Below, one piece after another: positions 1-38,346 of a DNA stretch of 38,346 nt (positions are counted from its first letter, which is position 1; every line of letters begins with the position of its first letter). Source of the DNA: Vitrella brassicaformis CCMP3155 (lineage: Eukaryota > Protista > Chromerida); the NCBI GenBank assembly GCA_001179505.1, contig CDMY01000633.1, forward strand, positions 1-38,346, written 5' to 3'. The notes below the pieces were generated by a model, which did no database searches, had not been told where the DNA came from, and saw only the letters and a list, made by a program, of their open reading frames with translations. A program made the translations under genes and the position numbers.

Positions 1-71
1 CTGTTGTCGGATTGCCTGCCCGCCCGCCCGCCCGCCTGCTGGCTGTATAAGTAACCAAGTGCCAATTCACC
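1..71. repeat. Terminal direct repeat, left copy (71 bp, identical to 38276-38346)
   Basis: ctgttgtcggattgcctgcccgcccg...gtaaccaagtgccaattcacc matches the last 71 nt of the window base for base. Confidence 0.97.
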
Positions 72-274
72 GACCGACCGCATCGAAGGGACGGCCACAC
101 GTGGTGTACGTTCATGTCTGCCTGGCTGCCCGATCGTGAGCAAGACGCAGGTTTTTGTGTGCTGGCTCACACCCTCCACTCCCCCTCCCCCCTGTCCGTC
201 TTGTCTTTTGGTCAACCTAGACAGAATTATCTACATGTGTGTGTGTATGTATGTGTGTGTGTGTGTCTGCCTAC

Positions 275-1061
275 GACTTTTTGGCTGCCTGCATCCCTGA
301 GCGTGGACAGACAGACAGACAGACGGACAGCCGGCTGTGTGTGTGGATGGGTGGACGACAGGTAGGAGACTGTGAGGCACTCACTGGATTTGGATGAGTG
401 GTCGGCATGGCTGTCCTGGCTGGTGCGGCGGATGGAATGGAGTGCTTGCCTTGCATGCGACTGATGAATGAATGAATGGGACAAGCGGACGGACAAGAAA
501 GACAACGCAATCAAAGAAGGAAATGGTTTCTTCCGGGTGGGTCTGTCTGTGGCTTCGTCACATACACGCACACACACATTCACGAAACCTTCCATCCTTG
601 TTGGTTGTGGTGGGCAGTGAGTGAGTCGAGAGAGAGGCAAGAGGCAATCAACGGAGGGCCACGTAGTGCGTCGTGTGTGTTGTATGTATGTTATGTCGTG
701 GGGCAGCTCTCAGTCACTCGTGGACTGGGCAGTTCAGTTGAGGCAATACACATAGAGGTCATGTCGTCATGTCATCTTTTATCGACACACAAACATCAAT
801 CACATCGTACGTACGTACGTACGCATGCACGCCTGCCACTGCCCAGAGCTCCCAATCACGGTGTGGCGGCGGGCTCTTGTGTCCTCCACAAGTGCCAAGC
901 TTGGCGCCGGTGGCGTGCAGAGCTTGAAGGGATGCACTGCACACCACCTTCGCCTCAGCGCAGGCAGGGCACAAGAGAAGACGCACACGTGCACCGGACA
1001 GATATGCGGAAGATCGGAAAGCATCTTCCTTCTCTATCGCTACGGCTACAGCCCGGCCCAT
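275..1061 (-). CDS. Possible spliced hypothetical gene (5' exons); may continue across the end-to-start junction
   Basis: ATG at 1061; phase-compatible candidate exons 995-1061 and from 936 down, plus 385-460 and 275-296, with canonical AG/GT flanks and microsatellite-containing intervals. Complete model not resolved; no recognisable domain. Confidence 0.3.
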
Positions 1062-1233
1062 TTCGTATGAGCTGAGCTGAGCTGAGTCAGCCACCGACAC
1101 ACACGAATCTCGAACCCAGCAGGCGGTACGTAGCAGCACTCGACAACGCCCGCAGCTCAAGGCAGTGACACCCACCCATCCCTCTCTCCCTGTCTCCCTG
1201 TCTCCCTGTCTCTCTGTCTCTGCTACGTATGCA

Positions 1234-4200
1234 TCAGCCAGGCTGTCCCACAAAGGGGGTGGCGGCCCACCGCGCCACCTCATCCACCGACCCCGCAAAC
1301 ACCACCTCGGTCTTGCACTGCTCACACAGGTACTCCTCGGGCCGCATCGGCAGCGGCTCCCTGGCCTCCTTGATGCGCTCCTTGTTCTCCTCGGCCCGTC
1401 TCGCATTCGCCGCCCTGATGCGGGGGAGGCTCAGCTGCCATGCGGCCCTGCGGTCGGCGTAGCACTTGGTGCAGATGTGCATGTGTCTGCAGGGGATGTA
1501 CATGACCGACGCAGGGCCGTGCTCGCCGAAACAGATGGTGCAGTCGGCTGTGGCAGACGGAGGGGACACAGACGGGGCCGCGCTACTGGATGATGAGGGC
1601 GAGGGCTGCTGGTGCTGCTGGTGCTGTAGTTGCGCCAGCCTGGGGACCGGGGCGGGCACAGACAGACACAGACAGCAGCATCATGATGTACACATGCATC
1701 GATGTGGGTTCTCCTGTCGCTCACTTCCACTTGGTCTGTTGCAGCTGGCGCATGAGGCCCTCCTCCTTCTCCTTGGCGTCTCTGGCATCCCGCTCCTTCT
1801 GCTCGAGCTGCCTCCGGAGGTCATTCACCAGCCGAGCGCTGGCACAGGAATGGGCCATGCCTAGTCGCCCGATAGCCGGTGCCGCCGGTCGTGTGGGGGG
1901 AGGTGGAGGGGGGAATGAGGGAGGGGGCGGGAGCGGCAGATTCCCGCTGCTGCTACTGCTGTTGCTGCTGGTGCTCGTGCCGGACATCGATGAGGCAGCC
2001 GGCACACCGGGGCCGGTCGGACGAGCCGGTCGAGGGTCTACTGCAGACGATCTGAAGGAAGGGTGGAGACGCAAAACTGTGTGCGTGTTTCACACATGAG
2101 CCACGCACGGCCCTTTGTTCCGCCACTCACAGTGGTAGGTTTGACGATGGCGATGATACTTGTACTGGTGGCATGGCAGCCGTAGGGACGAGGGGAGGCG
2201 CACCACTGACGCATCCACAGGAGACACACGCACGCACAAGCTGTCTCTCTACCGGCATACACCAGTGTGTATCAATTCTACGTATGTACCGGTGTATGTG
2301 TGAGTCGACAAGTCCGCGAGCAGAGAGCCCTTGGGGACCAGGATGCCCGCCACACGACGACGGCAGAGGACGACCATCACGACTGAACACACACAGACAC
2401 TCATATGCATCGGCGCATGCCTGCCTGTCTGTCTGTCTGTCTGTCTAAGACGTCTGCATACGTACCCGAGTGGCGACTGTGGTGGGATGGTCGGCTGCTG
2501 GGCGTGTGTCTTGTGTTTCTTCTTGTGCTTGCGATGGACCGGTATGAACTCTGAACCTCCGTCACTATCATCGCCATCGCCGTGGCCGAGCGGGTCAGCT
2601 GGCGGGCTTGCAGAAGAGCTACTAGACACAGATGGACCCGATGGCCCCCTACAGATCAGATCGATAGAGGCACACACACAGACATTAGCCAACGCCGCCT
2701 GGAGACGGACAGTCGTGTCATGTGCTCACAGGAAAGGGTCGATGGACGAGGTGGGCCGCTCTTCAGCGTCACTAGTACTGACGGCCCCAGTGGACATCCT
2801 GAAGATATGACAGACAGACAGACGGACAGACAGACACAACCAATGCAACCTACCGGCCATAAGTGAATGCCTTCTGGCCTGCCTGTGTGCCCCACCCACC
2901 CAACCTGGTGTCTGGAGCGGTTGACGACACCGACGGCTCCCTCTCCCCATCCCCCTCACCCAGACCGTCGGCCTCACCGTCCCTTCCGTCAGACGACAAA
3001 TCGACTGATTGCTGCCGCTGCTTGTGGTTGCCCGCCTTGCACTTCCCGCCGCCCTTCTTGCTTGCTCTTCTCTCCTTTTCCCTCTCCCTCGCCTCCTCGG
3101 CAATCAGCCTCTCGGCCAGCTTGGCGGCCGCTCTCTCTGCCTTCTCGCTCGGCTGTCGCTGCTGCTGCTGCTGCTGCGGCTGCTGTGGCGAGGTCTGCAT
3201 CTCCCGCTGGACGATGCGTATGAATCGGGCTCCGCTCCGGACCCGTAGATCCTTGGTGTTCATCTGCCTGATCGCCGACTCCTGCTGCTGTGTCGACCCC
3301 AAATGCCGCAGGAGCACGCGGACGACCTCCTTGCGCCTCTCGGAGTCGGTGCATCCCTCGTCCTCCGGACGGTCGGGCCGAGACAAAGGAGGGATGGCCG
3401 CCAAATCCAGCGGTGAGAGCGTGTCGACCACCGGCGCAGAGGTGATGTGCGCCACGGGCAGCCTCTCACACAACCACTCCACCATGTGAACCGCACCTGG
3501 CAGGCAGGCAGGCAGGCAGGCAACACAGGGCCACGTATCGGGCCAGCCAGCCACTTGCATGCCACAGTAAGTTCCGCGTACCATGCCAGACAGCATAAGT
3601 GAGGGGGGTGTTGCCGCTCTTGTTCGGGTCGATGAGAGAGGCACCGTGGGCCGACAGCAGATCCAGGTAGCGACGGCAGAACTCTCGCGACATCTCTCCG
3701 AACGGCCACGGGGCCCACTGGATGGGGGTCTTCTTGGACCCCGGAGCCTCCTCGGTGGCAAGGGCTGGTTCGTGCTGCAGGAGGGTGTCAAAGATGGCCA
3801 GCATGTGGTTCTGGTACTGCGGGCTGGGGCGGGCTGGGAGGGTCGTTGGTCGAGGGCACAGCAAGGGGCCGTTGAACCCCGTATCGCCGAGTCGGACACC
3901 CACACCATGACGTAAGAGCACCTCCAAAGCCGTCACGTTGGCGAAGTAGAGGGCCGCCCCGAGGGCTTCCTTCCCCTGGCTGGTGACTGCGGCTCCGCCT
4001 GCTATGAGGGCCTCCAGCACGGCCGCCTGGATCTCTCGGGACGGCCAGTTAGACAGACAGCTGTGCACTACTTGAACACCTTCGGGGCTGAAGTCGCTGT
4101 TGGTGGGGTTGTCCACCGCCCATGCCAGCTGCGCGAGTGACAGCAGGGAGATAAGGAGTCGACATGAACCACACTACAACAATGAATACATCGTCGGTAT

Positions 4201-4466
4201 CGTTTCATTCTTACCAAGGGGATGGTGCATGCAAAACTGGCCCGGTGGTTGACGCCACGCACTACGGCTGCCGCATCGGCATCTGCTCCGCCGTCGACGA
4301 GCGCCCCGACCTCATCGGCCGCGGCGCACGTGAGGCTGCGGGTCAAGATCCGATCAGCCAGCTGTCTGCTGATGGGAGTGTCGCCATCCTTGCCCTCGAC
4401 CCTCACGAGGGTGAACGACCCATGGCACCGCTCCTCACCGTCACCCTCTTGCCGCTCCTCCTCCAT
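1234..4466 (-). CDS. Ankyrin-repeat-like protein with coiled coil and C-terminal C3HC4 (IAP-like) RING, about 845 aa, 9 exons; putative E3 ligase
   Basis: Exons 4215-4466, 3582-4128, 2905-3496, 2730-2798, 2466-2648, 2290-2382, 2131-2205, 1731-2051, 1234-1639; all GT-AG and phase-consistent (2538 nt). Ankyrin-like motifs TIPL|LAWAVD, AALYFANVTALEVLLRHG, GNTPLTYAVWH|GAVHMVEWL. RING CTIC-x13-CRH-x3-CTKC...CEQC. Confidence 0.85.
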
Positions 4467-4885
4467 CTGCAACACGCACACACACACAACTGAGAACGTA
4501 AGCGACTTGTGATGCGTGACGGACCTGACTAGCAGGTCTTTCCTCAGGCGGCTGCGAAGATGTGGCCGACATCAATCAAAGCTAAGCTAAGCTTGGTCAA
4601 CAACAAACACGGCTGCACATCCATCCATCAGCGGGCACAGATCTGCCTTTTCACGGCCCAGCCATCGAGCTCTGTCGGGCCGCTCCACAGCCACCAACAC
4701 CGACGGAGGCCGCCACCGCCATAGCTAATGGACGCATGATCCATTGACTGGCGGAGCTGCCTCTATTCTCTTTCCTGCGGGCTATTCTCGCGTAAATTTC
4801 ATGTGGGTGTGAGGAAATAATGCGGCCCGCCGCCGGAGACCCGCGGCTTAGCTTATTCCGTTGATCCGTAACAGTGGGGAGGAGG

Positions 4886-9481: not shown

Positions 9482-9976
9482 ATAGAGAGGGATACCGACT
9501 GGGGGAGGGGGGGAGAGTGGGAGAGAGAGGTAGACTATATCCATGAGTGCATGCATCGATGGGATGGATTGGATGGTGTGGGTCTGGCTGCCTGTCTTGT
9601 GAAGCGCCTCGTTGTTTTTTCAAGACATAGAGGGAAGGATGGGTCGAATCGAATCGGAATGGGCCCTCATGCCTGCCTCTCACCTGTCTGGCCTGGCCTG
9701 CCTCGCCGAGCTCTGCTGCACTGCACACCAACACCGGCACACCGACAGACACCATGATAATAGGTCAGGCAGGCGCAGAGAGGCGAGCATAGAGGGTCCA
9801 TTTCAATAGTGCGGTGATGGCTGGCCGTGGCTCCATGGATGGACGCTTCATGGGCTGACACAATGCATGCATGGGTATAGGGTGGTAGAGAGAGGATGAG
9901 ACACTTACAGAACACATGAAGGTCGGTCCATAACAAATAAAGGTCTGTACACACGCCGTCTGTTCGTCTCCAAGCA

Positions 9977-12930: not shown

Positions 12931-13290
12931 TTTCTCCGCTGCGGGGCGATCGAATCGGCCGCAGGGGGAAGAGCAGTGAGGGAATGGGAGATGAGAGCGG
13001 GCGCTAGATCCTCTGTTGAAGACGATTGAGCCATCCATGGGTTGACAAGCCATCGCAACTCATCCATCTCGTGGCGCTCCCCATCATCATCGGCCTCTCT
13101 TCGTCGCCTCGTCCAGGCATGGCGAGCGCACCTCTCTCTTCAGCAACCAACCGACAGAGGACGAGGCCTGTCAGCTACGTGAATAGGGCCACGTGACAAG
13201 GTATGGCGCGTCAAGCGATGGAAGACCATCATCTTTCTGAGATGCTGGCTGGCTGTCCTACCTCGCTTGTTGTTTTCAGGACGCTCGACC

Positions 13291-16200
13291 ATGTCTGCGG
13301 CTGCACTCGTGGATGGCCTGGCTAGTGGCAGCCAACAAACCCGAGCCGACTGCATTCGCGCCCTCGCCGATGAGATCGGCAAGGATCTTGTGGGGAGTGA
13401 CCGCACCGACCTCATCAGGCGTCTGCTGGAGGCCAATACTCGGGCACTGCTAGCGCTTCTTGAGGCGGTGTCCTCCTCACGCGAGACTGAAAGGCCTGCC
13501 GGGTTTGTCCTCTTCGCGCTCACTGCCACACGAGAGAGAGACCTTCCGGACGCCAAGTGGCTGACCACGCAGGCCCTGTCTGCTGCTGGCTCCACGGACA
13601 GTCTGGTGGCCATGATGGTCGGCGCCAAGGACGAGGCCTGCGTGTCTGTCGCCTTGAACGTCTTCTCAGAGGTGTTGCAGCGAGGGGTTCAGTCAGGCGA
13701 CTCGGGTGCCCGCGACCTGCTGCTCAGCAAGCACTACGACATCGTGACGACCTGTCTGACCTACCTGGCGTCGCAGAGGGACTCGCAGGGCTACCCTTTC
13801 ATCCTCAGGCTCATCTTTATCGAATCCATCTTCTCCAGACGCTTCCCGACGCCGCCTGCTCCGAGGACGTGGGAGCCTCTGCTGCCATGCCTGTGTGAGG
13901 CGCTGCTGCGCGACGATGCCCTCCGGTCTGCCAGGCTCTCCTACATCAGGCACCTCAACCAGATCATCGCCGAATGCATCAGCTCCGCATCAACTACAAG
14001 TGAGCGATGGATGGATGGATGGATGGATGGATAACACAGAGAGCTGGCATCCACCAGACCAGATCTGTGTCTGTCATGACCCCATCCATCAGGTGCCTCT
14101 GAAATTCTGTCCCGGTTTGTGTCCTCGCATCTCGAGAGCAGCATGGCCATCCTCGACAGCGGCGGCTCCACAGATAGCCTCAATGCGATAGCCTCAATGC
14201 GCTGGCGGGCCTCCATCGCGATCTCATTGATGTTCTACTACACCTTTCTGCTAGGTTGGCATACCATACCCACACGTTTCAATGATATGGTGCCTGGGTC
14301 TGTCTGTCTGTCTGTCTGCGCGTGTAGATGATGATGCTGATCTGACCGTGCTCTACCGGTTGTGTGAGCGACTGCTGGAGGCCCCTCGAGTGCTCAGGAT
14401 CGTCGCAGACCACCTCATGAGAGGTCTCAAGGAGCCAGAGCCACTTGTGCAGACGGTCTCGGGAGACCGATCTGACAGTCGGCGCGCTGTGGATGAGTGT
14501 CGAGCCCTTTCTGGCCTCGCCGTCTGTATCCCACGGGCACTCATCTGTGAGCAGAGACAGTCTCTCTTATCCGGCATACGTGCCACTGTTGTGCGTGTGC
14601 GTGCAGGCGCTGGTCACACTGCTGCAGCGATTCAGGCGGGCTTCCCCGATGTCATCATGGCACTCACACAGCACTGCCAGCACAGCAGGGGGTTCTTTAA
14701 CTACACCCCACGTGTGCTCGGCGTCATGGATGTGTTCACACTCGCAAACTCCAAGGTGGGCGGGTCCGCCAACGGAGGGAGGTCTCGTGATACTCTCCGA
14801 CACACGTGTGGGATATTGTGTGTGTGTGTGTGTGTGTGTTTGTTTGTATCGATGTGTGCAGATGATGATCGACATCGGTGCGGTAGAGGTCGTGTGCGAT
14901 TTGCTGCTCAGGCGCCACGCAGAGAAGACGCCAGCACATGCCACGACCAGCGATTCGCCGGCGCCAATAGGTTTGGTCGGAGGGTGTTGGCAAATCCTGG
15001 GCAGGATGGTCGTGTAAGCATCCAGACCCGATATGAGATGCCCACACACATAACGGTCACATGTGATGTGTTTGTTGCATGTGTGTACCTTATCTCGATG
15101 TTTCCATCCAGCTATGGCGAGTCCCGCGTGCGTCCCAATGCGCCGTACAACAAGGTCTCGCAAAAGATCCTCCAGGTCACTGACTGATGGATGAGCAACC
15201 TAGGTCATGCGTCCTCAGCTTGGCAAGCTGTGACGGTTTCTTTTGCTTGTTTCCAGAATGCGTCCGTCCAGAAGTTGCGTGAGCTTCACTGCGGCACCGG
15301 TGGCCTCGACGTCCAAGACACCAGCAGGCGCCCCAAGGCCAAGAAGGGCAGGATCAAGGGGCACTCAAAGGCGAAGACATCCCAGTAGGCCAACGAAGCG
15401 ACAAGGCCACACGTGTGTGAGGATATCAAGCATGGATGGCATGCAGGCCATGCAGCCCGCCAGACCCCACCTCTTGCCCGCCGTCATCCTCCTCCTCCCC
15501 CCCGTCAGATCAGAAGGCCGACGGCGCAGCAGGGGAGGACGCTGCTCCCTACGTTATGACATGGAGCGACAAGACTGCTCGTGGGGCGACACCTCTCGCC
15601 GGCGTCCTGGCGTTCTTCGACCAGATCGAAGAGAAGGAGAACGAGCGTGCTGCAGTCGTGTTAGCTGACCTCATGGCGACCGACGAGAGGGCGGAGAAGG
15701 ACAAGACGGCGGGCAAGGGCAGAGGCGGGGGGAAGGCTAGAAAGGGCAAAGGGCCACCGAGTGTGGCTGAGTCTGCGCGCTCCTATGATGTGTAAGTGGG
15801 CAACGACACGGCAAGCCCCCGCCACTGATTGGTGTGTACCGTTTGCTTGTATTTGTCAGGTGTGTTGATGGTCGTGATGCCTCTGACAGAGTGGCTGCCG
15901 CCGGACCCCAGGCAGGGTGAGTGTGTGGGCGGGCGGGAACGCAGCACGGCTGCCAGCTGTGTGTACGTGCCATGGACTCTGTGTGGGTCTCTCTGGGCCA
16001 GATCTGCTGCTGGTGCTGGCCCAGGGGAGAGGGACCCTCAGCCCCGCGGCAGAAGGAGGAAGAATCGAAAGAAGAAGCTCAACAAGGGCAGGGGCGAATC
16101 GCAGTAAGTGATGGAAGGAGAGAGGGAGGGGGAAGGGGCCACATTACGGTGGGCTGTGTCATCCATTTCGGCTCTCGCAGGTCTGTTGAGTCGGTGGCTG

Positions 16201-18232: not shown

Positions 18233-18462
18233 GTAGATCAGACAAGCAGAGGGAAGGGCGGGCGGTGTTGTACAGGTGGTGGATGGGATGGTAGGGGATG
18301 CCAGCTGTTGACCGACTCACTATGGCCAGCCTGCGAGTGTAGCTTTCATTTCACTACATTCCATTGCATGTCATGCTCATACAGACACATTTCACGTGAA
18401 TGTCGTTGGATAGCCTCACACACGTACTGCACACGGTCCCTCATAGTCTGTCGGCACGTCAC
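16163..18462 (+). repeat. Inverted segmental duplication, arm A (about 2.3 kb)
   Basis: Exons, introns and 3' flank align by eye to the reverse complement of 30113-32364; the last exon differs at only 2 of 145 amino acids. Boundaries approximate. Confidence 0.92.
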
Positions 18463-23982: not shown

Positions 23983-24087
23983 CACGGCCTCCTCGTCTCT
24001 GTCCGTCACAAGCCTCTCCCTCTCCGGTGGTGATAACGCGGAACCCTAGGGGGTTTGAGCCCTAACCCTGTACATAACCAAAAGGAA

Positions 24088-25399: not shown

Positions 25400-28300
25400 T
25401 CAGACATCATACCCCAGCGCCTTGGCCACAGTGACCATATCCTTGTCGCCACGGCCGCACAAGTTGAGCTGCAACACACACATACAGAGAGCGCGAGAGA
25501 GAGAACGAGATTCGTTGCTGATATGTGGAGAGCGTTCTTCGTTAGTCTCCCTCACCAGCACGATGTGGTCCTTGGGCAGGTCCTTGGCCATCTTGATCAC
25601 GTAAGCGATGGCATGAGCCGGCTCCAGCGCCTGACGAACGGTCAAGACGACACACATAGACAGACCGTTTGTCATCCGACCATCCATTCCATCCACTGAC
25701 TGCTACGCTACGCTGCCTACCGGAATGATGCCTTCAGTCCTGGAGCAGGTCTGTATGGCGTTGAGTGCCTCCTTGTCGGTCACCCACACGTACTCGGCCC
25801 GCCCGCTGTCCTTGAGGGCTGCGTGCTGCGGGCCGACGGCAGGGTAGTCCAGGCCGGCGGAGATCGAGTGGGTCTCGATGATCTGCCCGTGGACGTCCTG
25901 CAGCAAATAGGTCCTGTTGCCGTGAAGCACACCCGGCTTGCCTGAGCCGCCACACACACACACACACACACACACGCGCATACACGTGTGCAAAGAATGT
26001 GCACGTGTGTCTGTCCGCCTTGACGACGCACCTCCCGATAGCGTGGCAGAGTGTTTGGGGTTGTCGCCAACGGGTCCCGTTTCGCCGCCGGCCTCCACAC
26101 CGATGAGCTTGACGCTCTTGTCGTCCAGGAAGGGGGCGAACATGCCGATGGCGTTGGACCCGCCGCCCACACACGCCACTATGGTGTCGGGGAGACGCCC
26201 GGGGCCGCACCCATTGGCGAAGGGACCCTCCCTCAGCATCTGGGCACGGGCCTCACGACCTGAGATGGACGAAGGCAAAGGGGCGATGCGTGAGTGAATG
26301 GATGGCCTGGCAGGGAGTGGCCTTGTGTGTGCTTGGTGTGTTTGCGTACGTACCGATGACGGCTTGGAATTCCCTGACGATGTCCGGGAATGGGTGGGGG
26401 CCGATGGCCGAGCCGATGATGTAGTGGGTGGTGCGGATGTTGGTCACCCACTGTCATGACACACCCACACACACAGACGTACATCCGACATGCGTGTGTC
26501 TGTGTCTGTGTTGGGATTCCTTACGTCTCGGAGTGCCTCGTTGACGGCGTCCTTGAGCGTCTGTGAGCCGCATGTGACGGGGACGACCTGTGCGCCGAGC
26601 ATCTTCATGCGGAACACATTGAGCTTCTGGCGCTCCACGTCAACCGCACCCATGTACACGATACACTCCAACCTGCACACCACACAAGACAACAACCAAC
26701 GGCAACAGATTAATGGATGCAGTGGTGAGGTGTATGGTATGGCCGTGGTGTGCGTGTCCGCGTCTGAGGCTCACCCGAAGTGCGCGCATACGGTGGCTGT
26801 GGCGACGCCATGCTGACCGGCACCCGTCTCGGCGATGATGCGCTTCTTGCCCAGACGTATCGCCAGCAGCGCCTGACCCACCGCATTGTTGATCTGATCA
26901 CACAGCACAGCAGAGGGGGGAGGGGAACAAGACAACAGTCCACAAGAAGTCAGTCATCCACGCCAAGTCCTGGCCAGCCCTTTCCCCTCCTCCAGGCTCT
27001 CACCTTGTGTGCCCCGGTGTGTGCGAGCTCCTCTCTCTTGAACCAGATCTGCGCCCCGCCCACATGGTCCGTCAGCCGCTGGGCAAAGTAGAGTGGCGTT
27101 GGCCCTCCGATGAACTCCCTCCTGTATCGCGCCACCTCCGCCAGGAACTCCGGGCTGGCCATGGCTTCCTTGAAGGCCGCCTCCAGCTGCTCGTGCGCCT
27201 GCATCAGCGTCTCGGGGATATAACGGCCACCGAACTCGCCAAAACACCACTTGGACGGGTCGGTGGGCGACTGGGGGGCGACGCCGTTGGCTGCCATCGG
27301 TGGCTGACCGTTGGCGAGGGCTGCGGTTCGCGCCGCGTGTGCCTTGAGATCGGTGCACACGGCCTCGATGGCTGCGCACCGCTCGGCGACGCCAGAGCTC
27401 CCCTTGGCGGCCACGCCCTCTATGGCGTTGACGAGGGCTGAGCCGACGACGAAGCCATCAGTGCCCAGAGAGGCCAGCCGCTCCACATGCTCGCCCCTGA
27501 AGACATATTGAGAAGGGTAAACAAACGTGTCGGCTGCTGTCTTGCTGGATGTGTTGCTGTCTGTCTGTCTGTCTGTCTGTCTGTCTCACTTGGATATTCC
27601 GAATCCGACAGCGACGGGCAGTTTGGTGAATTGCCTGATGATGCTGAGAGTGTCCTTGAGATCGGCGGTGATCCTGTTCCACGTGTCGGCGTCGCGGGTG
27701 CCCGTCACACCCGTCAGCGACACACAATAGATGAACGATGACGCCGCTGCCGCCAACTGACATATCACATGTGACGATCTGTGTGTGCGTGTGTGTCTTG
27801 TCTTTTTGTGTTTGTGTTGTGTCGTGTGTACCTGCTGCACACGGGCCTGTGTGCTGGTGGGTGCGATCAGTGGTATGAATGAGAGGTCGGACGCCTTGCA
27901 GTGTCCCAAGAAGGCCACGGCGTCCTCAGGCGGCAGGTCCACAACGATGAAGCCGTCGACGCCCACCTGAGCGGAGCGCTCGCACACCGACTGCAGCCCG
28001 TAGGCCAGCAGGGGGTTGTAATATGTCATCAACACAACCTGACAGCACGGACGGACGGACGGAGAAGCAGCCAGTGCAGACAGGCAGACGGATGGATGGA
28101 TGGATGGACGGATGGACGCAGATGCAGGGCAGAGTGATTGGCAATACAATACAATACAATAAATGCCATTCCTACCGGTGTGGTGAGTCCCTTGGCGCGT
28201 GCCTTGGTGACCATATCGAAGCAGTCGTCGATGTTGGTGTCGTTGCCCCGCTGCAACGCAACAGTGCTTGCACGCTGAATCGTCGGACCATCTAGACCGA

Positions 28301-28664
28301 CACAGACCGACACACACAGAGGAAGTAAGTCATGGGCCAGGGTCTATCCGTGTGTTTCCACGGTCCTTCGCCTACCCGCCAGGGGGTCCGAGAATGGGAT
28401 GCCGAGTTCGATGACGTCGGCGCCGCCCCGCTGCAGCGCCAGCATGGCATCCACCGTCACAGCCTTGCTGTCAAACCCAGCTGCATACACCACACACACA
28501 TCACACATCACACAGAGCCCACCTTCGTGTGTGTGGGTGCTGTGTGTCTGTGCTGCTGTGCTGCTGTGCTGCTGTGCTACCGTACCTGTGAGGTATGCGA
28601 CGAATGCCGTCTGGCCGGCCTGCTTGGCCCTCTCGAAGGCGTCGAGGAGCGACTGCACGGGCAT
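25400..28664 (-). CDS. TRP5: Bifunctional tryptophan synthase, alpha-beta fusion, about 707 aa, 13 exons
   Basis: Exons 28586-28664, 28376-28480, 28176-28291, 27832-28038, 27590-27756, 27004-27496, 26775-26893, 26525-26672, 26354-26450, 26032-26259, 25721-25941, 25556-25630, 25400-25468 (2124 nt). Alpha motifs [13 protein letters not shown]|DGPTIQ, VDLPPE, VGFGIS; beta motifs [14 protein letters not shown]|INN (PLP lysine), [31 protein letters not shown]. An in-frame upstream ATG at 28910 is possible. Confidence 0.97.
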
Positions 28665-29022
28665 GATGATCTGGTGATCTATCGACTGCGGGCTGCTGAT
28701 ATGGACTGGAGCGGAGGCAGAGCTGGGACGAATGGACGAACTGATGAGCGGATGAGCTGATGAGCTGTGAAAGTGCTGAGAGTTGAGACGACTTGGTGGT
28801 AGATCTGCTTCACGAGCTGATGTGGCTGCTGTTTGCGAGTGCTCCACACTCCTCAAACCTTCAGCCGTCCTTCGAGGAGAGGTGCGAGCTGTGAGAGCGA
28901 TCTCTCTCATCTCCCGCGCTCTTCTACGGTTCTCCAGGGCTTGCTACAGCCTTTTGCTTCTGTTAATCAGTGTCGAGGGGTGCCTGCCGAGTTTGTTTAT
29001 TCCTCGACTATAAAGTAATGAA
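28665..29022. promoter_or_regulatory. Probable bidirectional promoter between tryptophan synthase and FHIT
   Basis: Short, lower-GC interval between divergent start codons; TATAAA at 29009-29014; GAGCTG repeats at 28754-28767. Inferred from position only. Confidence 0.45.
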
Positions 29023-29965
29023 ATGCTTCCGGCCTTCGGCAGTGCGGTGTCCCCTATGCCTCTCTTTGTCGCGTTGAGGGCCTCACCCATCGCTCAGCGG
29101 CAGTCCCGGCTCTTCACAAGAACCATGGCAAGGTGGGCACCTTCATTCCACCGTGGCTGCATGTCTGTCTGTCTGTGTGTCTGACTGTCTGTGCGCAGGC
29201 ATTCGTTCAGAGAGCATCTCGGCACGTCGGAGATGGCCGATTCCTACCCCTTCGGCGACTTCCGCATTGCAAAGGAGAATGTCTTCTTCTGGAGCCCTCG
29301 AAGCATAGCTTTTGTCAACCTCAAACCCATCCTCAGCGGCCACGTGCTCGTCACACCAAGAGCCGTCAAGAAGGTGCGATGCGATGCGATTGGCCCATCC
29401 CATAATGCTCGCCGCCCCTCTCCATTGCTCGCGTGTCGATTTGCTTGTCGTGTGGCGTCAGAGGTTTCGGGATTTGGATGCTGACGAAGTGGCTGACCTG
29501 TGGCAGAGTGTGCAGAAGGTGGCCATGTTGATGGAGCGGCACCACGGTGCGGAGGCCATGACGATGGCCATCCAAGACGGCGAGGCAGCCGGCATGACAG
29601 TGGCGCACTGTCACGTCCACATCATCCCAAGGCACAGGGGCGACTTCAGCAAGAACGATGAGATCTACGACGCACTGGATAACGCCAACATCGGCCAGGC
29701 GGCCCGTGAGGCCCAGTCGCCCTCGTCTCAGTCGTCGACGCAGATGAGCCAGCAGCACCACCACCATGGTGTGGCGCCCGACCCCCAACCAGAGCAGCAA
29801 ACGAGACGGTGGGAGGGGGAGAGGATTGGTTATTCCCTGTCCGTGATATTGGTGTTGATGTGGGTGTTATGCAGGACGAGGACACGTGAGGAGATGGCTG
29901 CTGAGGCTGCTGAGCTGAGGGAGGTCGTTAGGAGGGCCGCGGAGCACCCAGAGGCCTTCGGTTGA
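29023..29965 (+). CDS. FHIT: Fhit-branch HIT hydrolase (bis(5'-adenosyl)-triphosphatase), up to 240 aa, 4 exons
   Basis: Exons 29023-29132, 29199-29373, 29462-29808, 29875-29965 (723 nt). Motifs FVNLKPILSGHVLV, AIQDG, HIT triad HCHVHII (29606-29626), GDFSKNDEIY, C-terminal RTREEMAAEAAELR. Alternative ATGs at 29056, 29125, 29233. Confidence 0.93.
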
Positions 29966-30112
29966 GTATGTTTCTACTGCAGAGAGGAGCCAATTCCTGA
30001 ATGCGAGTGCAGACACGTGTGTGTAGTGTAGCACTTTGAGTGACCAACGGAGGGCGGGGCGGGGACTGCTGGGGTGAGAGTGACACTACATCGTCATGTA
30101 CTGCAATCAAGC

Positions 30113-32364
30113 GTGACGTGCCAACAGACCATGTCGTGAGGCTATCCAACGACATTTACGTGAGATGTGTCTCGTATGAACATAACATGAAATGTAATGA
30201 AAGCTACACTCGCTGGCTGGCTGGCTGACGATGGTGAGTCGGTCGACAGCTGGCATCCCCCACCATCCCATCCACCATCCACCACCTGTACATCATCTGC
30301 ACACCGTCTGATCTCCTCAATTGTCCGTCTGCACGTGGGCTACGATGGTCTTCTCGGGCTCACTGCGGCAGGAAGGGCATCTCATCACCGCATACCGACG
30401 CACCTCCTCAGGCACCGGCTGGCCCGCCCCCTCCAGCCGCTCCTTCTCGGCCTTGGCCCTCTCGTGTCTGCCCTTCCACTGCTGCCAGCAATCGGCACAC
30501 AGGCACAGGTGGCCACAGGGATAGAACAGCACTGTGGGCGGGCTGTCGTTGCAGATCCCGCAGATGGGACGGGGAGGGGGCGGCGGTGCCGCAGCAGCAG
30601 AGGCGGCCGCTGCTTCCCTGTCCTCCAGCCGACCCTCCATCTTGCTGGCCTCTCTCGCCAGTGCCCGCAGTGCCTCCCTGGCCTTGGTGATGTCGCGCTT
30701 GAAGGCCTCCACATCTTCAGGGGAGCGGAGGGATGACAGCCGGTGCTCCGTGAGGCTGCACACACGCAACAAGGAGGCCTTGGCGGCGAAGTTTGTGTGC
30801 GTGTCTGTCTACCCACCCTGTGAGTGCTCTCTGTAGCAGGCGGTCATGTTGCTGTTGGAGTGTTTGCGTCTTCGCCTCGACTGCCGCAGTCGCCTCCGTC
30901 ACCGTCGAGATGTCCGCCTCCAGCCTACAGGAGAGCCAAGGGGCAGTATGAACACACTCAATTGCTCGTTAGTACGTGTGTGTGCTCACTGTCGCAGCTT
31001 GGCCTTAGTGCTCTGCAGTATTTCGCGCAGCTGCCCCTCCGATGACACCGAATCGACCTCGCCAGCTATCTCGTCATGACGCGAGGACCTGAGTGGGTGC
31101 CGATCAATCACTTCTGTGTGTGTGTGTGTGTGTGTGTGGCGTCGTTACTCACCTTTGAATGCGATCGTTGTGGGACGGCAGACGGCCAAAGAGGGACCCG
31201 TTGCCGTGGCCGGCACGTGTGTCGCTGCTGCTGCTGCGGGAGATCTCGCACGCACAACAGTAGAGCTGGTCGAGCCGCTCGCCTTCGCGCGTGACCCTCT
31301 CGCCGAACTCACAGACCTCCGCTGCCGTCGTCAGGGCTTTCAACGCATCGCGAGTCAACCTGATGCACAACAGCAATCAGTAAAGATGATTCAGAGCGCT
31401 TCATTTCCATCTTTGTACGTGTCTGGCTGCTCTTGCGTGGCTTCTGTGAGTGCCCCTATGGCCGCGTTGAGCTCGTTGGTCCGTTCCATGATGGTCGAGT
31501 GCCGGTCGAGCGCCTCGCCATAAGCACGCTCCATGCTGCAAATGGGTGACATGGACACACACATGACGCAGCTTACCGTCCGCCAATCCATCCCTCGATC
31601 CTTTGCTGACCTCTGCTGCTCCTCTATAGCCCTGCACACCGCATCCCTCAGAGGCCCGAGCGACGCCGCTGCTGCTGCTGCGGGTGCGCCACTGGCGTAG
31701 CCGCCCGACGTCATCGATGAAGAGGGCGGCATGGATGGCGGGCGCACCATGGCAGCGGTGGTGGCGTCGTGCAGCGATGCAGCGATGGCCATCTGGGTCT
31801 GCGCCTCATGCTCCTCCTCATCCCCACTGCACACCCAACCCGCAAATGACACATCTGCCGTGGTGCAGATGCCTGTCTGGGGCACGCAGCGGACCTGTCG
31901 TCTCCATCTTGCTGTGGTGGTTGTTCCTTGTCGGCTGCCAGGGTGAGTGCCGGCCCAGCTCCGACCGATGCGGCCACCGGGCCACTGACCGAAGCCGAAT
32001 GGGCAGCGAGACCATGGCCCTCTCGCAACACGGCCCCCAGGCCACTGCCGGCCTGCCCAGCCGTGTCGCTGCCGTCGCCCTGCAGAGGTTTGGTGGGGGG
32101 CCGGAGAGGCTCAGCACCGGACGAACGAGAAGAGGGCCGCGTCGTGTCTGCAGAGTCGGACATGGGCCTGCACATAGAGAGGATGCAGCACGTATTAGCG
32201 AGGGGTGACAGCTTGGCTGTGTTGTGTTGTGTGTGCTGACCTCTCCTGCCGTGTGGCTATGTGATCGCCGTCAGCACCAGCGTCCTCTACGTCGCCACCA
32301 CCGTCATCATGATGCTCTACGCCGTCCTCAGCCACCGACTCAACAGACCTGCGAGAGCCAATGG
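30113..32364 (-). repeat. Inverted segmental duplication, arm B (about 2.25 kb)
   Basis: Reverse complement aligns to 16163-18462 with scattered substitutions and small indels (arm B lacks about 10 codons, PSAAFDVARN). Confidence 0.92.
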
Positions 32365-34695
32365 ACGACACACAGGGACCGACCGACATGTGCTGTGGGT
32401 AGTCTTCTATCTATCTCATCATTTACTGCGATGTAGTGCCAGCAGTCCCTGTGCCGCCCCTGCCCCTCCTATGTTTCTTGTTTCTGTTCTTCCTCTTGCC
32501 CTTCGCCTGCGTCTCGTCCTCCCCTTGTCGACCGCCAGCACGACCGTCCTCCAGCCCAGCCATCAGCCGATCCGCCCTGGCGTTCTCGCGCTCCTCCATG
32601 CTGTCAAACAGATCCAGCAACTGAAGGGGAACAAATCAGGTCATGCACACAGGTGACCCAAGCAGATGTCGCCTTTGCCGCTGCGGCGTGTAGCATGCTT
32701 ACCGTCTGCGGCGTGGCTGCGTATTGGGTGCTCTTTCTGCCTTTCGTGGGCCTGGCCTGGCGCATGTTCTTGACCTGCTCGAGCTGGGAGGACACGTGTA
32801 CAAGATTGCCAGCAAGGAGGGAGGCATCAAGCACCCACACACCAACCCACCTGAAGGACGTCATGTGTGACGGTGTTTGGCCCTCCCGACACGGCGCGCT
32901 CTCCCCACTCGACCATGTTCATCATCGCGGTCTTGAACCAGGCAAAGAACCTCTCGACGCAGAATCTTGGCGCCTCGCCGAGGTGGTGTCTCACGACGCG
33001 GGTCACCAGGTGGCACATGAAGCGCGGAACACCACCGTCAACGGCTACCTGGGATACACAGGATGGATGAAGTCATCGATCGGCTGCACTCACTCGTGGT
33101 GGTGATTCACCTACCTTGGCGTAGTTGGCGTCTTCCAGCGACCCAACGATGCTGGGCAGCAGGTCAATGGCCATGATGTGCCCATCCAGGTTGACGATGG
33201 TGCTGATGCATCCCGACTCAAACACCGCGGTGCGATGGCCGATGTCTGCATCCCAAGAAACAAGAGCAAACCTGCACACGAGTGGGAAGCTTTTTCCATA
33301 CCGCCCACTCACCTGAGAAAGTCGCCGCCACTTCGAGTGCACACCAGGAGGCATTGTCTCTGCCAACGTCCTGCTTGGTATTCGGGTCAACCAATATCGC
33401 CTGCGATGGCCCCTTCCTGATGACCTTGTTCAAACGCTTCAGTGCCGAAGGGTTGGCGTGGAAAGTCTGCACCGGCCCGTCAGCGATGGATGCGACCTGG
33501 CGGGCGGCCCCCTCCACACCTGCACGACACAGACGCAGCACGGAACAGAGGAAAAGATAGATATCTATCTGTCCATTTGTATTGCGGCCTGCCCTCCGAA
33601 CCCTTCGACTTTACGAAGAGGAGCTGGCCAAAGCGGAAGATATAGCCGCAGAGGACAGCGGCGGCAAAGCGGTGGTCTTGCGAGGCATCTCGGGAGGTCA
33701 AGACGGTCACCAGGTGATCGGTATGACAGAAGATGTGATCACGGATGGCCTGGAGGTGCTCGTCGCGAACCTCACTGGCACCTGACAGATGGAGAACCAC
33801 ACGAACACGTACGTCAGTCCTCCTACCCACCCAACCATCGAATTTGTGGTCGGCTCCACTGACCTGCGCCCGCCAGTTTGACGTCCTGGTGAACTGTCGC
33901 TAAGAGATTCGTTGAGAAGTAGCGTAGCTCCTGCTCTTCCATCGCCGACTTGACCACTGCACCAAACAGCGGCATCCACACTGTGGGGCTCGGGGTTGGC
34001 GTCTTGAGGCCATCATGCGGTCGGATCATCATGTACATGAAGGTACTCGCGTCGTCGTCCCTAAGGATGGAGATCGCCCTGCTGACCGCCCTCGGATGCT
34101 GCTCGATCAGTCCGTTGCGCAGCCGCCCCACAGCCTGATGCCCTGTCTGCTCCGGGACCGACGCACTCGTATCCGCCACCACCTGCAGCGCCTGCCAGAG
34201 GATCCGGAAGCATGTCGCTGCCGTCCTGTTGGATAGCGTGTCGTTGCCCGTCACAATACGAGCAATGCGGTTGCAGAGGGTGGCAGCAGAGCCGACGGCT
34301 GCAACGAGCTTGAGGGTCGCCATGAGGAGAGAGGTGTCATTAGGGAAGGAGGACTTGTGCAGTAGGGCGTCGAGGACAACCTCGGCGTCATGGTGGCGTG
34401 TTGCGTGACTCACATCCTCAAAGGCAGCGAGCAGCAGTCGCAGGAATGGCTGATGGCCCAGAAGTTTTGTAGCCCAAGCATCATGCGCGGTGTGGCAAGC
34501 TTGTTGCGCACGAGGGAGAGCGTAGTAGCTGCAGCAACAAACCCCCCGCGCATAGTCCGCCAGCACCTCCAAGGTGCGATCAAACGAATCCGCATTGTCG
34601 AGGTCCAGTCCTGCCAGCAGGTCTTCCACGCTGCCCAGCACGCTACCGAGGGCCTCTGTCGGGCTGGCTGGTGTAGAGGAAGGTGCGCTCGCCAT
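30317..34695 (-). CDS. ARM-like repeat + UIM-like + coiled-coil + C-terminal RING protein, copy B (paralog of 13291-18232)
   Basis: 5' exons 33864-34695, 33602-33781, 33313-33519, 33115-33245, 32851-33048, 32703-32783, 32427-32620, then eight exons equivalent to copy A ending at TGA 30317; phase-consistent, no lesions seen. Confidence 0.8.
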
Positions 34696-35082
34696 GCCTG
34701 CACAAGCCGCTGAGGGCCGCTGCGAGATGGATGAGTTGTGATGGCTTGTTAACCCATGGATGGCTCAACCGTCTTCAACAGAGGATGGAAGGCTCTCCTC
34801 TCATCCCCATCCCTTCTGCCGCTCTTCCCGGGATCGCACCAGCTCGCCTCCCTGAGCTCGTGCTTGGCTTCGAAGCAACTGAAGGAGGGCAGTATGTTTA
34901 TTCTACTCAAGGAAGACGGGCGCCACTGACGCACAGTCGCTGGGCCAAGCAACGTTCCCGCCTGCGCCCCCTCTCTCCCTCTACTGAAGCCGCCGTCGTC
35001 AGCGAGCGGCATTTGTTCGTGCCTGAGAGCCTGAGTCAGCCCCCTTAGCTGCCCCGTCATCGGTGAGGTGCGTCTGGCGGCC

Positions 35083-36238
35083 ATGGGTATCCTTCGAAGC
35101 GACACGATGAAGCACGGCACTTTGGTGCTGCCGTCGGAGCGTGCGCGTCACTTCATCGACCTGCTGGGGCGCAAGGCCAACGTGCAGTTTGTCGACATGA
35201 ACGAGCGGACGATGCGGCGTCAGTACAAGCGGTACATCCAGCGGCTGGAGGAGATGGAGCGCATCCTGCGCTTCCTGCATGAGGAGATCGCCAGGCACGA
35301 GTTCAACGTCACCAAGGGGTCCGTCGAGGCCTTCCTCGAGAGCGACACCGAGACCTACCAGCTCGACCAGGTCGAGGACAGCCTCAAGCGGCTGTACGAG
35401 CAGTTCTCCCGGTTCAAGGAGAACAACAGCGACCTGCTGACGGAGAAGAACAACGCCATAGAGGAGAAATACGTGGCCATGGCCGCACTCGCATCGCTCC
35501 ACGAGGGGGGCGTCATGGGCGGCGTCGGCACCATGCCCACACGCCGACAGACCGAGCACGCCACGCAGTCGCTGCTGCAGGCGCACATCGAGGCCCCCCA
35601 CCTGGTCGACGACACCATGGCCTTCAGCAACATCGCTGGCGTCATCAACCAGGCCGACCAGGAGCGCTTTGCGAGGACGCTGTTCCGCGTCACCCGTGGC
35701 AACACCTTCACCCACTTCCAGATGATTAATGACAAGATCTACGACGCCAAGACCGGCAAGGAGGTCGCCAAGTCCGTCTTTGTCGTCTACTACCAGGTAT
35801 GTAAGCAGCAGCGAGGGAGGGAGCGGGCAACAACCACACCTGCAGGCACCCGAATCGTTCACCTCTCTGCCTGTCTGTCTGGCTGTGTGTGTGTCCATCC
35901 ATCAGGGTGCGGAGAGCAGCGCCATGTACGAGAAGCTGACCAAGGTGTGCAACGCCTTCGGCGTGTCCATGTACCCCTGGCCAGCATCGTACAACGACGC
36001 CGTCTCGCGCATCGAGGACCTGACCACGACCATCGAGGACAAGGCCAAGGCGTTGGACGCGTTTGAGCAGTACATCCTCGGTGAGATCCGCGACCTACTG
36101 GAGGTGCCGGGGGGCCCGCCGCCCGAGGGGGCCGACCTGGAGGAGCTCAGGAGCTCGCGCATCGAGGAGTGGCGCCTCTTCTGCCAGAAGGAGAAATCCA
36201 TCTACGCCACGCTCAATATGTTTGAGGTCAGCAACACA

Positions 36239-36276
<38 letters not shown>

Positions 36277-38005
36277 AAGAGACGGACAAATGGATGGACA
36301 CAGCACATGTGTGTGTGTATGTGTGGTGTGTGTGTTGGTCAGGGTGACATAACGCTGCGAGCCAACTGCTGGTACCCCTCTGCAGAGGAGGACATGATCC
36401 GGCACCTGCTGCTGTCCCAGTCCAACAAGCAGCAGGTGTCGGCCTTCCTGCTGTCGGACAAGGAGCGCACCACCAAGACGCCCCCCACCTACATCCGCCG
36501 CACCGAGTTCAGCTACGCCTTCCAGGAGCTGGTCGACACGTACGGCATCCCCCGCTACCAGGAGGCCAACCCCGGGCTCTTCACCATCATCACTTTCCCA
36601 TTCCTCTTCGGCGTCATGTACGGCGACATCGGACACGGCGCCTGCGTCCTGCTCTTCGGCATGTACCTGCTCATCTTCGCCGACTCCCTCAAGCGGGGCG
36701 ACGGGCCGCTCAAGGGCATGGTGGCCGCCAGATACATGATCGCCCTCATGGGCTTCTTCGCCACATACGCCGGGTTCATCTACAACGACTTCTTGAGCAT
36801 CGGCTTCGTCCTCGCACCCAGCCACTTCAAAGAGCCACCGGGGGTACACCATGGCGGCGGCGAGCACGGTGGCGGCGAGGAGGGCGGCGGGGCGTCCCAG
36901 ACGCAGTTTGTCGAGTGGCAGATCGACCCGAGCAGCAAGCCGACGCCGTTCGGTCTGGATTGGGCGTGGAAGGGGGCGCAGAACGAGTTGCTGTTCCTCA
37001 ACTCGTACAAGATGAAGTTTGCGGTGCTGGTGGGGGTGGCGCAGATGGGCCTGGGGGTGGTCCTCAAGGCATTCAACACCATACACTTCGCCAAACCGCT
37101 GGACTTCTTCTTCGAGTGAGAAAGAGAAGCAAGAGCCACACACACATGGAGCGGCATACACATGCAGATTGACATCGGTGACTTTCCTGTGTTGTGTTGT
37201 TAGGTTCGTGCCGCAGATCATCTTCCTGGTGGCGTTGTTCGGGTACATGGACTTCATGATCGTGTTCAAGTGGATGACCCCCGGCCCCCTCCAGGCGGAC
37301 CTCGACCCCTCCGTCAAGGCCGTCAACAAGCCGGGCCTCATCAACACCATGATCAACATGTGCCTCGCACCCATGAAGGGCTCCGCCATCGACCCCAGCG
37401 AGCAGCTCTTCGGCGGCCAGGAGACCATCCAGAACATCCTCCTCATCCTCTGTGCCATCTCCATCCCGGTGATGCTGTTCCCCAAGCCGATCGGGCTGCT
37501 GATCTGGCACAAGATGCACCCGCCCCGCACAGTGCACCATGACGACGGCGACGACGAGGAGCGGGGGGAGGGCGAGCACCACGACGATGACGAGGAGGAC
37601 GAGCATGAGCACTTCAACTTCAGCGAGGAGTTCATCCACCAGGTCATCGAGACCATCGAGTACGTCCTGGGGACCATCTCCAACACCGCCAGCTACCTCC
37701 GCCTGTGGGCCCTCTCCCTGGCGCACCAGCAGCTGGCCCTGGTCTTCTTCGAGAAGGCCATCCTGGGCTTCATCGAGAGCGACGCCAACGTGGTGCTGCG
37801 AGCCGTGGAGCTCTTCTTCGGCTTCGCGGTGTTTGCGGCCATCACTTTCGGGGTGCTGCTGTGTATGGACGTGCTCGAGTGTTTCCTGCACGCCCTGCGG
37901 CTGCAGTGGGTGGAGTTCCAGAACAAATTCTACAAGGGAGACGGATACAAGTTCGCCCCCTTCAACCACAAGGCCATCCTCAGCACCGGAGAGGGAGACC
38001 TCTGA
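35083..38005 (+). CDS. VHA-a: V-type H+-ATPase V0 subunit a, about 869 aa, 4 exons
   Basis: Exons 35083-35796, 35906-36226, 36343-37115, 37204-38005 (2610 nt). MGILRSDTM start, YQEANP, FPFLFGVMYGDIGHG, SNTASYLRLWALSLAH (essential Arg), LHALRLQWVEFQNKFY. Confidence 0.98.
36234..36275. repeat. Compound (AC)n(AG)n microsatellite in V-ATPase intron 2
   Basis: Directly visible; representative of the simple repeats found in most introns of the window. Confidence 0.9.
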
Positions 38006-38135
38006 CACACAACACTGACACCCTACACACACAGTGACAATGGCGGTACAGTACAGACACACACGGAGGAGACAGACGAATGCAAACGCCCCAATGCACT
38101 GCACCCATATCTCTCCATTGTGGGCATGGTGTCAG

Positions 38136-38317
38136 TCAGTGACCTACCACACCTGCATCAATCCAATCGGCGATGGAAACCTCTTCCTTTGCGGATGTTT
38201 CTTTTTTCGCCGCCGCCCGCCAGATGATGATGCTGCCCGACCGCTTCTTTGGGTGCGTGGCCTGGCCGCTGAGTGCTGTTGTCGGATTGCCTGCCCGCCC
38301 GCCCGCCCGCCTGCTGG
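38136..38317 (-). CDS. Possible terminal exon of a minus-strand gene whose 5' part would lie at the window start
   Basis: Acceptor-like ttacttatacAG inside the terminal repeat, followed by coding-like sequence. More than one frame is open, so the frame is undetermined. Confidence 0.25.
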
Positions 38318-38346
38318 CTGTATAAGTAACCAAGTGCCAATTCACC
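38276..38346. repeat. Terminal direct repeat, right copy (71 bp, identical to 1-71)
   Basis: Exact match to positions 1-71. Confidence 0.97.

What the first reader, a model, noticed from the sequence alone, without database searches (positions are those of the whole stretch)
1..38346. Ends overlap exactly by 71 bp: a possibly circular 38-kb piece of intron-rich eukaryotic nuclear DNA
Seen: positions 1-71 equal 38276-38346, and the match includes unique sequence around a short (GCCC)n run. Known: an exact terminal overlap is what de Bruijn assemblers produce for a closed loop, and 71 is a common k. Inference: this is an extrachromosomal circle or amplicon (38,275 bp), one unit of a tandem duplication, or a locus flanked by a short direct repeat. 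The cargo is ordinary nuclear genes (tryptophan synthase, V-ATPase a, FHIT, three E3s) with no replication, capsid or transposase gene. A real circle would therefore be eccDNA or gene amplification, not a virus or plasmid.
Basis: partly seen in the sequence, partly recalled or inferred. Interest (0 to 1): 0.75.

Follow-up and report, generated by a model that had tools for sequence, protein, structure and literature searches.

The report
Repeat-bounded Vitrella scaffold, probably not a circle
The 71-base match between the two ends is real, but the window is an ordinary nuclear scaffold of the published Vitrella brassicaformis draft genome, and the match is most simply the mark of a short direct repeat where the assembler stopped, not evidence of a circular DNA molecule.

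Summary
Observation confirmed: bases 1-71 equal 38276-38346 exactly, and the 71-mer occurs nowhere else in the window.

Source identified: the FHIT exons match protein CEM27240.1 of Vitrella brassicaformis CCMP3155 at 100%. That protein's only contig is 38,346 bp, the window's length. The window is therefore one whole scaffold of the Woo et al. 2015 draft assembly.

That assembly used Velvet with k=75 (k=71 was used for Chromera), followed by scaffolding and gap closing. A closed Velvet loop would overlap by 74 bases, not 71.

In my k=75 graph simulation, a pure 38,275-bp circle never breaks at the junction. It breaks only inside an internal inverted duplication. A linear locus flanked by a 77-bp direct repeat reproduces the window exactly, including the 71-bp overlap (2x74-77).

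No replication, capsid or transposase domains were found. The ends fall in a gap between two convergent genes.

A repeat-mediated tandem duplication or an eccDNA cannot be excluded without reads. I put a real circle at about 10%. Interest is low.

The parts
1..71 (.). Left copy of the exact terminal overlap. Under the favoured model, bases 1-74 are the last 74 nt of a 77-nt direct repeat.
38276..38346 (.). Right copy of the exact terminal overlap. Under the favoured model, bases 38273-38346 are the first 74 nt of the same 77-nt repeat.
1234..2800 (-). RING (zf-C3HC4_3) protein gene no. 1. The last exon ORF is 1237-1680 and the stop codon is 1236-1234. The 5' limit is approximate. This is the gene nearest the left end, and its 3' end points towards base 1.
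2853..4571 (-). Ankyrin-repeat protein gene. The Ank_4/Ank_2 match lies in ORF 3469-4173. Limits are approximate.
16155..18419 (+). Left arm of the inverted duplication, carrying RING protein gene no. 2. The RING exon lies in ORF 17543-18229.
25706..28943 (-). Fused tryptophan synthase alpha-beta gene with at least five exon ORFs. Trp_syntA positions 17-246 and PALP positions 5-264 are matched. One exon ORF (26953-27585) carries the end of alpha and the start of beta. The 3' limit is approximate.
29023..29965 (+). FHIT-type HIT hydrolase gene (CEM27240.1, bis(5'-adenosyl)-triphosphatase). It has four exons and three GT-AG introns, and a JGI transcript-derived protein shows it is spliced.
30136..32372 (-). 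Right arm of the inverted duplication (90.5% identical to 16155-18419), carrying RING protein gene no. 3.
35164..38005 (+). V-ATPase subunit a gene, read as four exon ORFs covering profile positions 3-814 of 815. The stop codon is 38003-38005, 270 nt before the right copy of the overlap.
12966..13160 (+). Short conserved element whose inverted partner is at 34653-34829. It is not part of the terminal overlap and was only noticed in passing.

Best explanation
The window is one complete, gap-free scaffold of the published Vitrella brassicaformis CCMP3155 nuclear draft assembly. It is an ordinary chromosomal locus, A-R-B-R-C, in which a short exact direct repeat R lies on both sides of about 38.2 kb of unique, gene-dense sequence. 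R is about 77 bp: window 38273-38346 followed by window 72-74. At Velvet's k=75, the three k-mers inside R form a separate branching node. The contig for B then begins with the last 74 bases of R and ends with the first 74 bases of R. These share 2x74-77 = 71 bases. The terminal overlap is therefore a footprint of where the de Bruijn graph branched, not of a closed molecule. Shown: the source of the window, the k that was used, and the arithmetic. Inferred: that other left and right contexts (A and C) exist, and that the later pipeline steps left the contig ends untouched.
For: 1. Source. The window's FHIT exons are 100% identical to CEM27240.1 of V. brassicaformis CCMP3155, whose only contig is 38,346 bp long.
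2. The k used. The paper states Velvet 1.2.08 at k=75 for Vitrella, followed by SSPACE, GapFiller, ICORN, IMAGE and REAPR; k=71 was used only for Chromera. So 71 is neither k nor k-1.
3. Not a raw loop. The window holds exact inverted matches of 119, 93, 77, 76 and 76 bp. The raw k=75 graph of this locus was therefore never a single loop unitig, and the sequence is a repeat-resolved path.
4. Simulation. A pure 38,275-bp circle breaks only at those inverted matches, never at 38275/1. A linear A-R77-B-R77-C genome yields a path identical to the window: 38,346 bp with a 71-bp overlap.
5. Content. It is ordinary nuclear genes with GT-AG introns. There is no tRNA, no Rfam match and no replication, capsid, integrase or transposase domain.
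6. Position of the ends. They fall in non-coding sequence between two convergent genes and interrupt nothing.
Against: The repeat length of 77 is a fitted parameter, not an observation. Contexts A and C were not seen, because no searchable collection holds the other Vitrella scaffolds or the reads. With 550-bp, 1-kb and mate-pair libraries, a 77-bp repeat beside 38 kb of unique sequence should have been bridged. Failure to scaffold at both ends is explained more easily if the right end also links back to the left end, as in a tandem copy or circle, or if A and C are themselves repetitive. Post-Velvet steps could have changed the ends, which would weaken the arithmetic.
Confidence: 0.55

Rival explanations
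1. Repeat-mediated tandem duplication or amplified array (A-R-B-R-B-R-C). The 38.3-kb unit is present twice or more, head to tail, on a chromosome. Identical copies collapse in the graph, and the right end truly joins the left end through R.
For: It gives the same contig ends and the same 71-bp overlap as the favoured model, because R still has two left and two right contexts (logic). Conflicting pair links (right end to C and right end to left end) would explain why three rounds of scaffolding failed at both ends. The locus has a history of local duplication: a 2.3-kb inverted duplication and three RING paralogues.
Against: It needs the flanking repeat plus a further recent event, with the copies still identical over 38 kb. 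There is no depth information. FHIT is recorded on one contig only, but collapsed copies would look the same.
Confidence: 0.15
2. A real extrachromosomal circle (eccDNA or episomal amplicon) of 38,275 bp. It would either be excised by recombination between the two R copies and coexist with the chromosomal locus, or be free-standing.
For: There is an exact terminal overlap, and no gene is cut at the join. Short direct repeats are the known substrate for circle formation in other protists and in yeast (my own knowledge). Failure to scaffold at both ends is compatible.
Against: A free-standing circle predicts a 74-base overlap at k=75 and no break at this position. No replication or maintenance function was found. 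No report of eccDNA in Vitrella was found. Essential single-copy housekeeping genes such as V-ATPase a and TrpAB residing only on an acentric circle is unlikely. A rare excision product would not shape an assembly.
Confidence: 0.1
3. A post-assembly pipeline artefact. Contig extension, gap closing, error correction or breaking (SSPACE, IMAGE, GapFiller, ICORN, REAPR) created or resized the terminal duplication. Its length then carries no information about the genome.
For: The scaffold passed through at least six such steps. It is a resolved path, not a raw unitig.
Against: None of these tools is known to me to copy a scaffold's start onto its end. The Velvet arithmetic reproduces the ends exactly without invoking any of them.
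Confidence: 0.15

Closest known systems
Repeat-bounded contigs in de Bruijn graph assemblies (false 'circular' or direct-terminal-repeat calls)
   Same: The contig starts and ends inside the same short exact repeat. The overlap length follows from k and the repeat length (2(k-1)-r for Velvet). The content is ordinary chromosomal genes.
   Different: The branching node and its other neighbours were not observed here. They are inferred from the published k and from a simulation.
Direct-repeat-mediated circular amplicons and eccDNA (Leishmania amplicons, yeast eccDNA; my own knowledge)
   Same: A multi-gene segment of tens of kb is bounded by a short direct repeat that could mediate excision. There is no dedicated replication gene.
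   Different: There is no evidence of elevated copy number, junction reads or selection. The overlap length does not fit an isolated loop at the k that was used.
Published V. brassicaformis CCMP3155 nuclear assembly (Woo et al. 2015, PMC4501334)
   Same: The window is one of its 1,064 scaffolds.
   Different: None known. The paper does not mention circular or extrachromosomal nuclear DNA.

Membership tests
Isolated closed loop in the assembly graph (true circular contig) | Terminal overlap equals the assembler's node overlap (k-1 = 74 for Velvet at k=75, or k in other assemblers) | tested here: not met
   The overlap is 71. The published k for Vitrella is 75.
Isolated closed loop in the assembly graph (true circular contig) | No graph branch at the opening point. 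In a circle with internal repeats, the contig opens at those repeats. | tested here: not met
   In the simulated 38,275-bp circle at k=75, breaks fall only at 16.7-18.1 kb and 30.4-31.7 kb, never at the 38275/1 join. This is a simulation, not the real graph.
Isolated closed loop in the assembly graph (true circular contig) | Reads or read pairs spanning the junction, with no links to other contigs | not testable with these tools
eccDNA or gene amplicon | Copy number above that of single-copy genes | not testable with these tools
   No depth data.
eccDNA or gene amplicon | Physical circularity (exonuclease resistance, outward PCR, long reads going round) | not testable with these tools
   This needs experiments.
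eccDNA or gene amplicon | Homologous repeat at the breakpoints able to mediate excision | tested here: inconclusive
   A 71-bp exact direct repeat (inferred 77 bp) is present, but the same repeat explains the overlap without any excision.
Virus, plasmid or transposon | Replication, capsid, integrase or transposase genes | tested here: not met
   Pfam on 99 coding-like ORFs plus 30 others gave only V_ATPase_I, Trp_syntA, PALP, RING, HIT and Ank, apart from one sub-threshold PAP1 match (E 0.005).
Organelle genome | tRNA or rRNA genes and organelle-type gene content | tested here: not met
   No tRNA and no Rfam match. GC is 0.60. Spliceosomal GT-AG introns are present.
V. brassicaformis CCMP3155 nuclear scaffold | An annotated protein of that genome maps at 100%, and its contig has the same length | tested here: met
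   CEM27240.1 / A0A0G4GD99 is recorded on one contig of 38,346 bp. Its exons are 100% identical to the window.

The most novel reading that the evidence does not exclude
The 38.3-kb segment exists in the Vitrella culture as an extrachromosomal circle or amplified unit. It would be formed by recombination between the two copies of the ~77-bp direct repeat, and would carry V-ATPase a, TrpA-TrpB, FHIT and RING ligase genes. This would be the first nuclear eccDNA or amplicon described in a chromerid.
Probability: 0.1. Interest if true: 0.55.

Novelty: not a real feature. Interest (0 to 1): 0.13.

Why it matters
The main value is as a caution. An exact terminal overlap in a short-read eukaryotic scaffold is not evidence of circularity unless its length matches the assembler's node overlap and the graph has no branch there. 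Here the published k shows it does not match. If closure were nevertheless real, it would be a first case of repeat-mediated gene amplification or eccDNA in the free-living relatives of apicomplexans. That would be of moderate interest for genome plasticity in this lineage.

Tried and rejected
- **Searches for an independent copy of the junction.** A 36-mer of the overlap had no match in viral, JGI metagenome or prokaryotic genome contigs. A 23-mer had no match in metagenome contigs. So no independent contig crossing either end, and no other copy of the repeat, was found. The Vitrella assembly itself is in none of the searchable DNA collections.
- **V-ATPase exon search**. Hits were at most 51% identical over most of the exon; short alignments reached 66%. 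Full-length proteins fall outside the tool's length filter, so it gave no taxon. The FHIT exon search and cluster look-up did.
- **Microsatellite-length bubble at (GCCC)n as the cause of the break.** Rejected, because such a bubble would give an overlap of about the microsatellite length (~20 bases), and the overlap runs 15 bases before and about 35 bases after it.
- **Flanking copies of a long transposon or LTR element.** Rejected, because contig ends would then carry the end and the start of the element, which differ unless the repeat is shorter than 2(k-1).
- **Organelle, virus or plasmid.** Rejected on gene content and introns.
- **Whole window as a large diverged palindrome.** Rejected. 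Only 2.3 kb and about 0.2 kb are duplicated.
- **Literature.** Nothing was found on Vitrella eccDNA or a long-read Vitrella assembly.
- **Spliced models.** Exons of V-ATPase a, TrpA-TrpB and the RING genes were searched one by one by reference and were not joined. Searches with full-length proteins were therefore left out.

Full report
**1. The observation**

Bases 1-71 and 38276-38346 are identical. 71 is the only non-trivial prefix-suffix match, and the neighbouring bases differ, so the match does not extend. No 20-, 25- or 31-mer of the overlap occurs elsewhere in the window on either strand. Self-blastn finds no weaker copy. The (GCCC)4 run covers about 20 of the 71 bases and the rest is unique sequence. 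The match is far beyond chance.

**2. What the window is**

GC is an even 0.57-0.64. There are no tRNA genes and no Rfam matches at gathering scores. Pfam scans of exon-sized open frames gave the following:

| Gene | Strand | Coordinates |
|---|---|---|
| RING (zf-C3HC4_3) protein no. 1 | - | last exon 1237-1680, stop 1236-1234 |
| Ankyrin-repeat protein | - | Ank match in 3469-4173 |
| RING protein no. 2 | + | RING exon in 17543-18229 |
| Fused TrpA-TrpB, several exons | - | about 25.7-28.9 kb |
| FHIT-type HIT hydrolase | + | 29023-29965 |
| RING protein no. 3 | - | RING exon in 30320-30808 |
| V-ATPase subunit a, four exon frames | + | 35164-38005, stop 38003-38005 |

One TrpA-TrpB exon frame (26953-27585) carries both the end of the alpha chain and the start of the beta chain.

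A scan of 99 coding-like frames in one call found only these families. Thirty further frames added none, apart from one sub-threshold PAP1 match at E 0.005. So there is no replication, capsid, integrase, reverse-transcriptase or transposase domain.

**3. Source**

The FHIT exon search returned a JGI protein, P0121, 98% identical over the searched region. Against the window it is identical across the exons once three short introns are removed. The introns have GT...AG boundaries, so the gene is expressed and spliced.

The 90% cluster of P0121 also contains CEM27240.1 / UniRef100_A0A0G4GD99, annotated as bis(5'-adenosyl)-triphosphatase of Vitrella brassicaformis CCMP3155. It is recorded on a single contig of 38,346 bp, which is exactly the window's length. 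Its exons map to the window at 100%.

The window is therefore one complete scaffold of the published Vitrella nuclear draft genome (Woo et al. 2015, PMC4501334). The proposed check against a chromerid reference assembly cannot be made, because this scaffold is that reference.

**4. How that assembly was made**

The paper's Methods state the following for Vitrella:
- This was followed by SSPACE scaffolding with 550-bp and 1-kb libraries, GapFiller, ICORN, IMAGE, REAPR breaking with mate pairs, and a further round of scaffolding.
- k=71 was used for Chromera, not for Vitrella.

It is established Velvet behaviour (my own knowledge of the manual) that a node of N k-mers is printed as N+k-1 bases and that neighbouring nodes overlap by k-1. 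A closed loop would thus carry a 74-base overlap. The observed 71 is neither k nor k-1.

**5. The locus was never a single loop unitig**

The window contains one inverted duplication, 16155-18419 against 32372-30136, at 90.5% identity over 2,292 aligned bases. Each arm carries a RING gene, and the RING exon is 98% identical at protein level.

Between the arms there are exact inverted matches of 119, 93, 77, 76 and 76 bp. All are at least 75 bp and would collapse in a k=75 graph. The gap-free 38-kb sequence is therefore a path resolved with read pairs and gap closers, not a raw loop node.

**6. Simulation**

I built a k=75 bidirected de Bruijn graph from two model genomes.

(a) A pure circle made of window 1-38275. 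It breaks into unitigs only at the five inverted exact matches (16.7-18.1 kb and 30.4-31.7 kb). The arc from 31.7 kb through the 38275/1 join to 16.7 kb is one unbroken unitig. A circle gives no reason for the contig to open where it does.

(b) A linear genome A-R-B-R-C, where R is 77 bp (window 38273-38346 followed by window 72-74). The path from the unitig after the first R node to the unitig before the second R node is identical to the window. It is 38,346 bp long with a 71-base terminal overlap, as expected from 2x74-77.

The documented k plus a 77-bp direct repeat thus reproduce both ends exactly. This is a fit with one free parameter. It also assumes that later pipeline steps left the ends alone, so it is an inference, not a demonstration.

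**7. The join itself**

This gap sits between the stop codon of V-ATPase a (+ strand, 38003-38005) and the stop codon of RING gene no. 1 (- strand, 1236-1234). No gene is interrupted or restored by closing the sequence. Gene structure therefore cannot discriminate between the models.

**8. What remains open**

A 3-k-mer branching node requires that the 77-mer has at least one further left context and one further right context. Three situations provide this:
- a single-copy locus flanked by R;
- a repeat-mediated tandem duplication;
- a chromosomal locus together with a circle excised through R.

They differ only in copy number and in pair links, neither of which I could see.

One point favours the self-linking models. 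A 77-bp repeat should have been bridged by the 550-bp, 1-kb and mate-pair libraries. Against that, every one of the 1,064 scaffolds ends at two unscaffolded ends. The self-linking models also need an extra recent event on top of the same pre-existing repeat.

My estimates:

| Explanation | Probability |
|---|---|
| Single-copy locus flanked by the repeat | about 0.55 |
| Tandem duplication | about 0.15 |
| Pipeline artefact | about 0.15 |
| Real circle of any kind | about 0.10 |

**9. Independent data**

- A 36-mer and a 23-mer of the overlap have no match in viral, JGI metagenome or prokaryotic genome contigs.
- No paper in the library reports circular or extrachromosomal nuclear DNA in Vitrella, or a long-read Vitrella assembly.
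- FHIT is recorded on one contig only, so no second assembled copy of the locus is known. Identical copies would collapse in any case.

**10. Limits kept**

Spliced gene models were searched exon by exon by reference. The exons were not joined, so no full-length protein searches were made for V-ATPase a, TrpA-TrpB or the RING genes. The large representative search and structure prediction were not needed. Nothing in the window looks human, viral or toxin-like.

**11. Verdict**

The terminal overlap is real. The best-supported reading is that it marks where a Velvet k=75 contig of the published Vitrella draft genome ran into a short direct repeat. It is not evidence for an eccDNA. Interest is low. 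A read-level check would settle the question cheaply.

Noticed in passing
window 16155-18419 and 30136-32372: A 2.3-kb inverted duplication, 90.5% identical, with convergent paralogous RING (zf-C3HC4_3) genes. The RING exon is 98% identical at protein level while the rest of the arm has drifted, which suggests purifying selection or gene conversion on that exon. It encloses 11.7 kb carrying TrpA-TrpB and FHIT.
   Followed up: partly
window 12966-13160 and 34653-34829 (inverted): A ~190-bp element conserved between two places, with no detectable similarity in the sequence around it. One 72-nt block differs at only 3 bases. The right copy lies about 350 bp upstream of the first V-ATPase a coding match. 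In one reading frame, 2 of the 3 differences are synonymous. There is no Pfam match and no convincing Rfam match. It could be a shared 5' exon, an upstream ORF or a regulatory element.
   Followed up: partly
window 25706-28943 (-) and 29023-29965 (+): The fused tryptophan synthase alpha-beta gene and FHIT are head to head. The first TrpAB exon frame stays open to within about 80 bp of the annotated FHIT start, although the TrpAB start codon was not located. This may be a bidirectional promoter.
   Followed up: no
window 29023-29133: The JGI transcript-derived FHIT protein (229 aa) starts 11 residues after the annotated Vitrella protein CEM27240.1 (240 aa). The true start codon is unsettled.
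   Followed up: no
window 36205-37692 (-) and 6570-8315 (+): These are the two longest open frames in the window (496 and 582 codons). Neither has a Pfam match. The first is antisense to V-ATPase a exons and is a GC-rich shadow frame. The second is proline-, glycine- and glutamine-rich, and it is doubtful that it is coding. Long ORFs in this 60% GC genome are not evidence of genes.
   Followed up: partly
window-wide, e.g. 233-287, 14802-14858, 25941-25986, 27547-27591, 31108-31144: Frequent (GT)n/(CA)n and (GTCT)n microsatellites lie in introns and intergenic DNA, and (CAG)n/(CTG)n runs lie in open frames.
   Followed up: no
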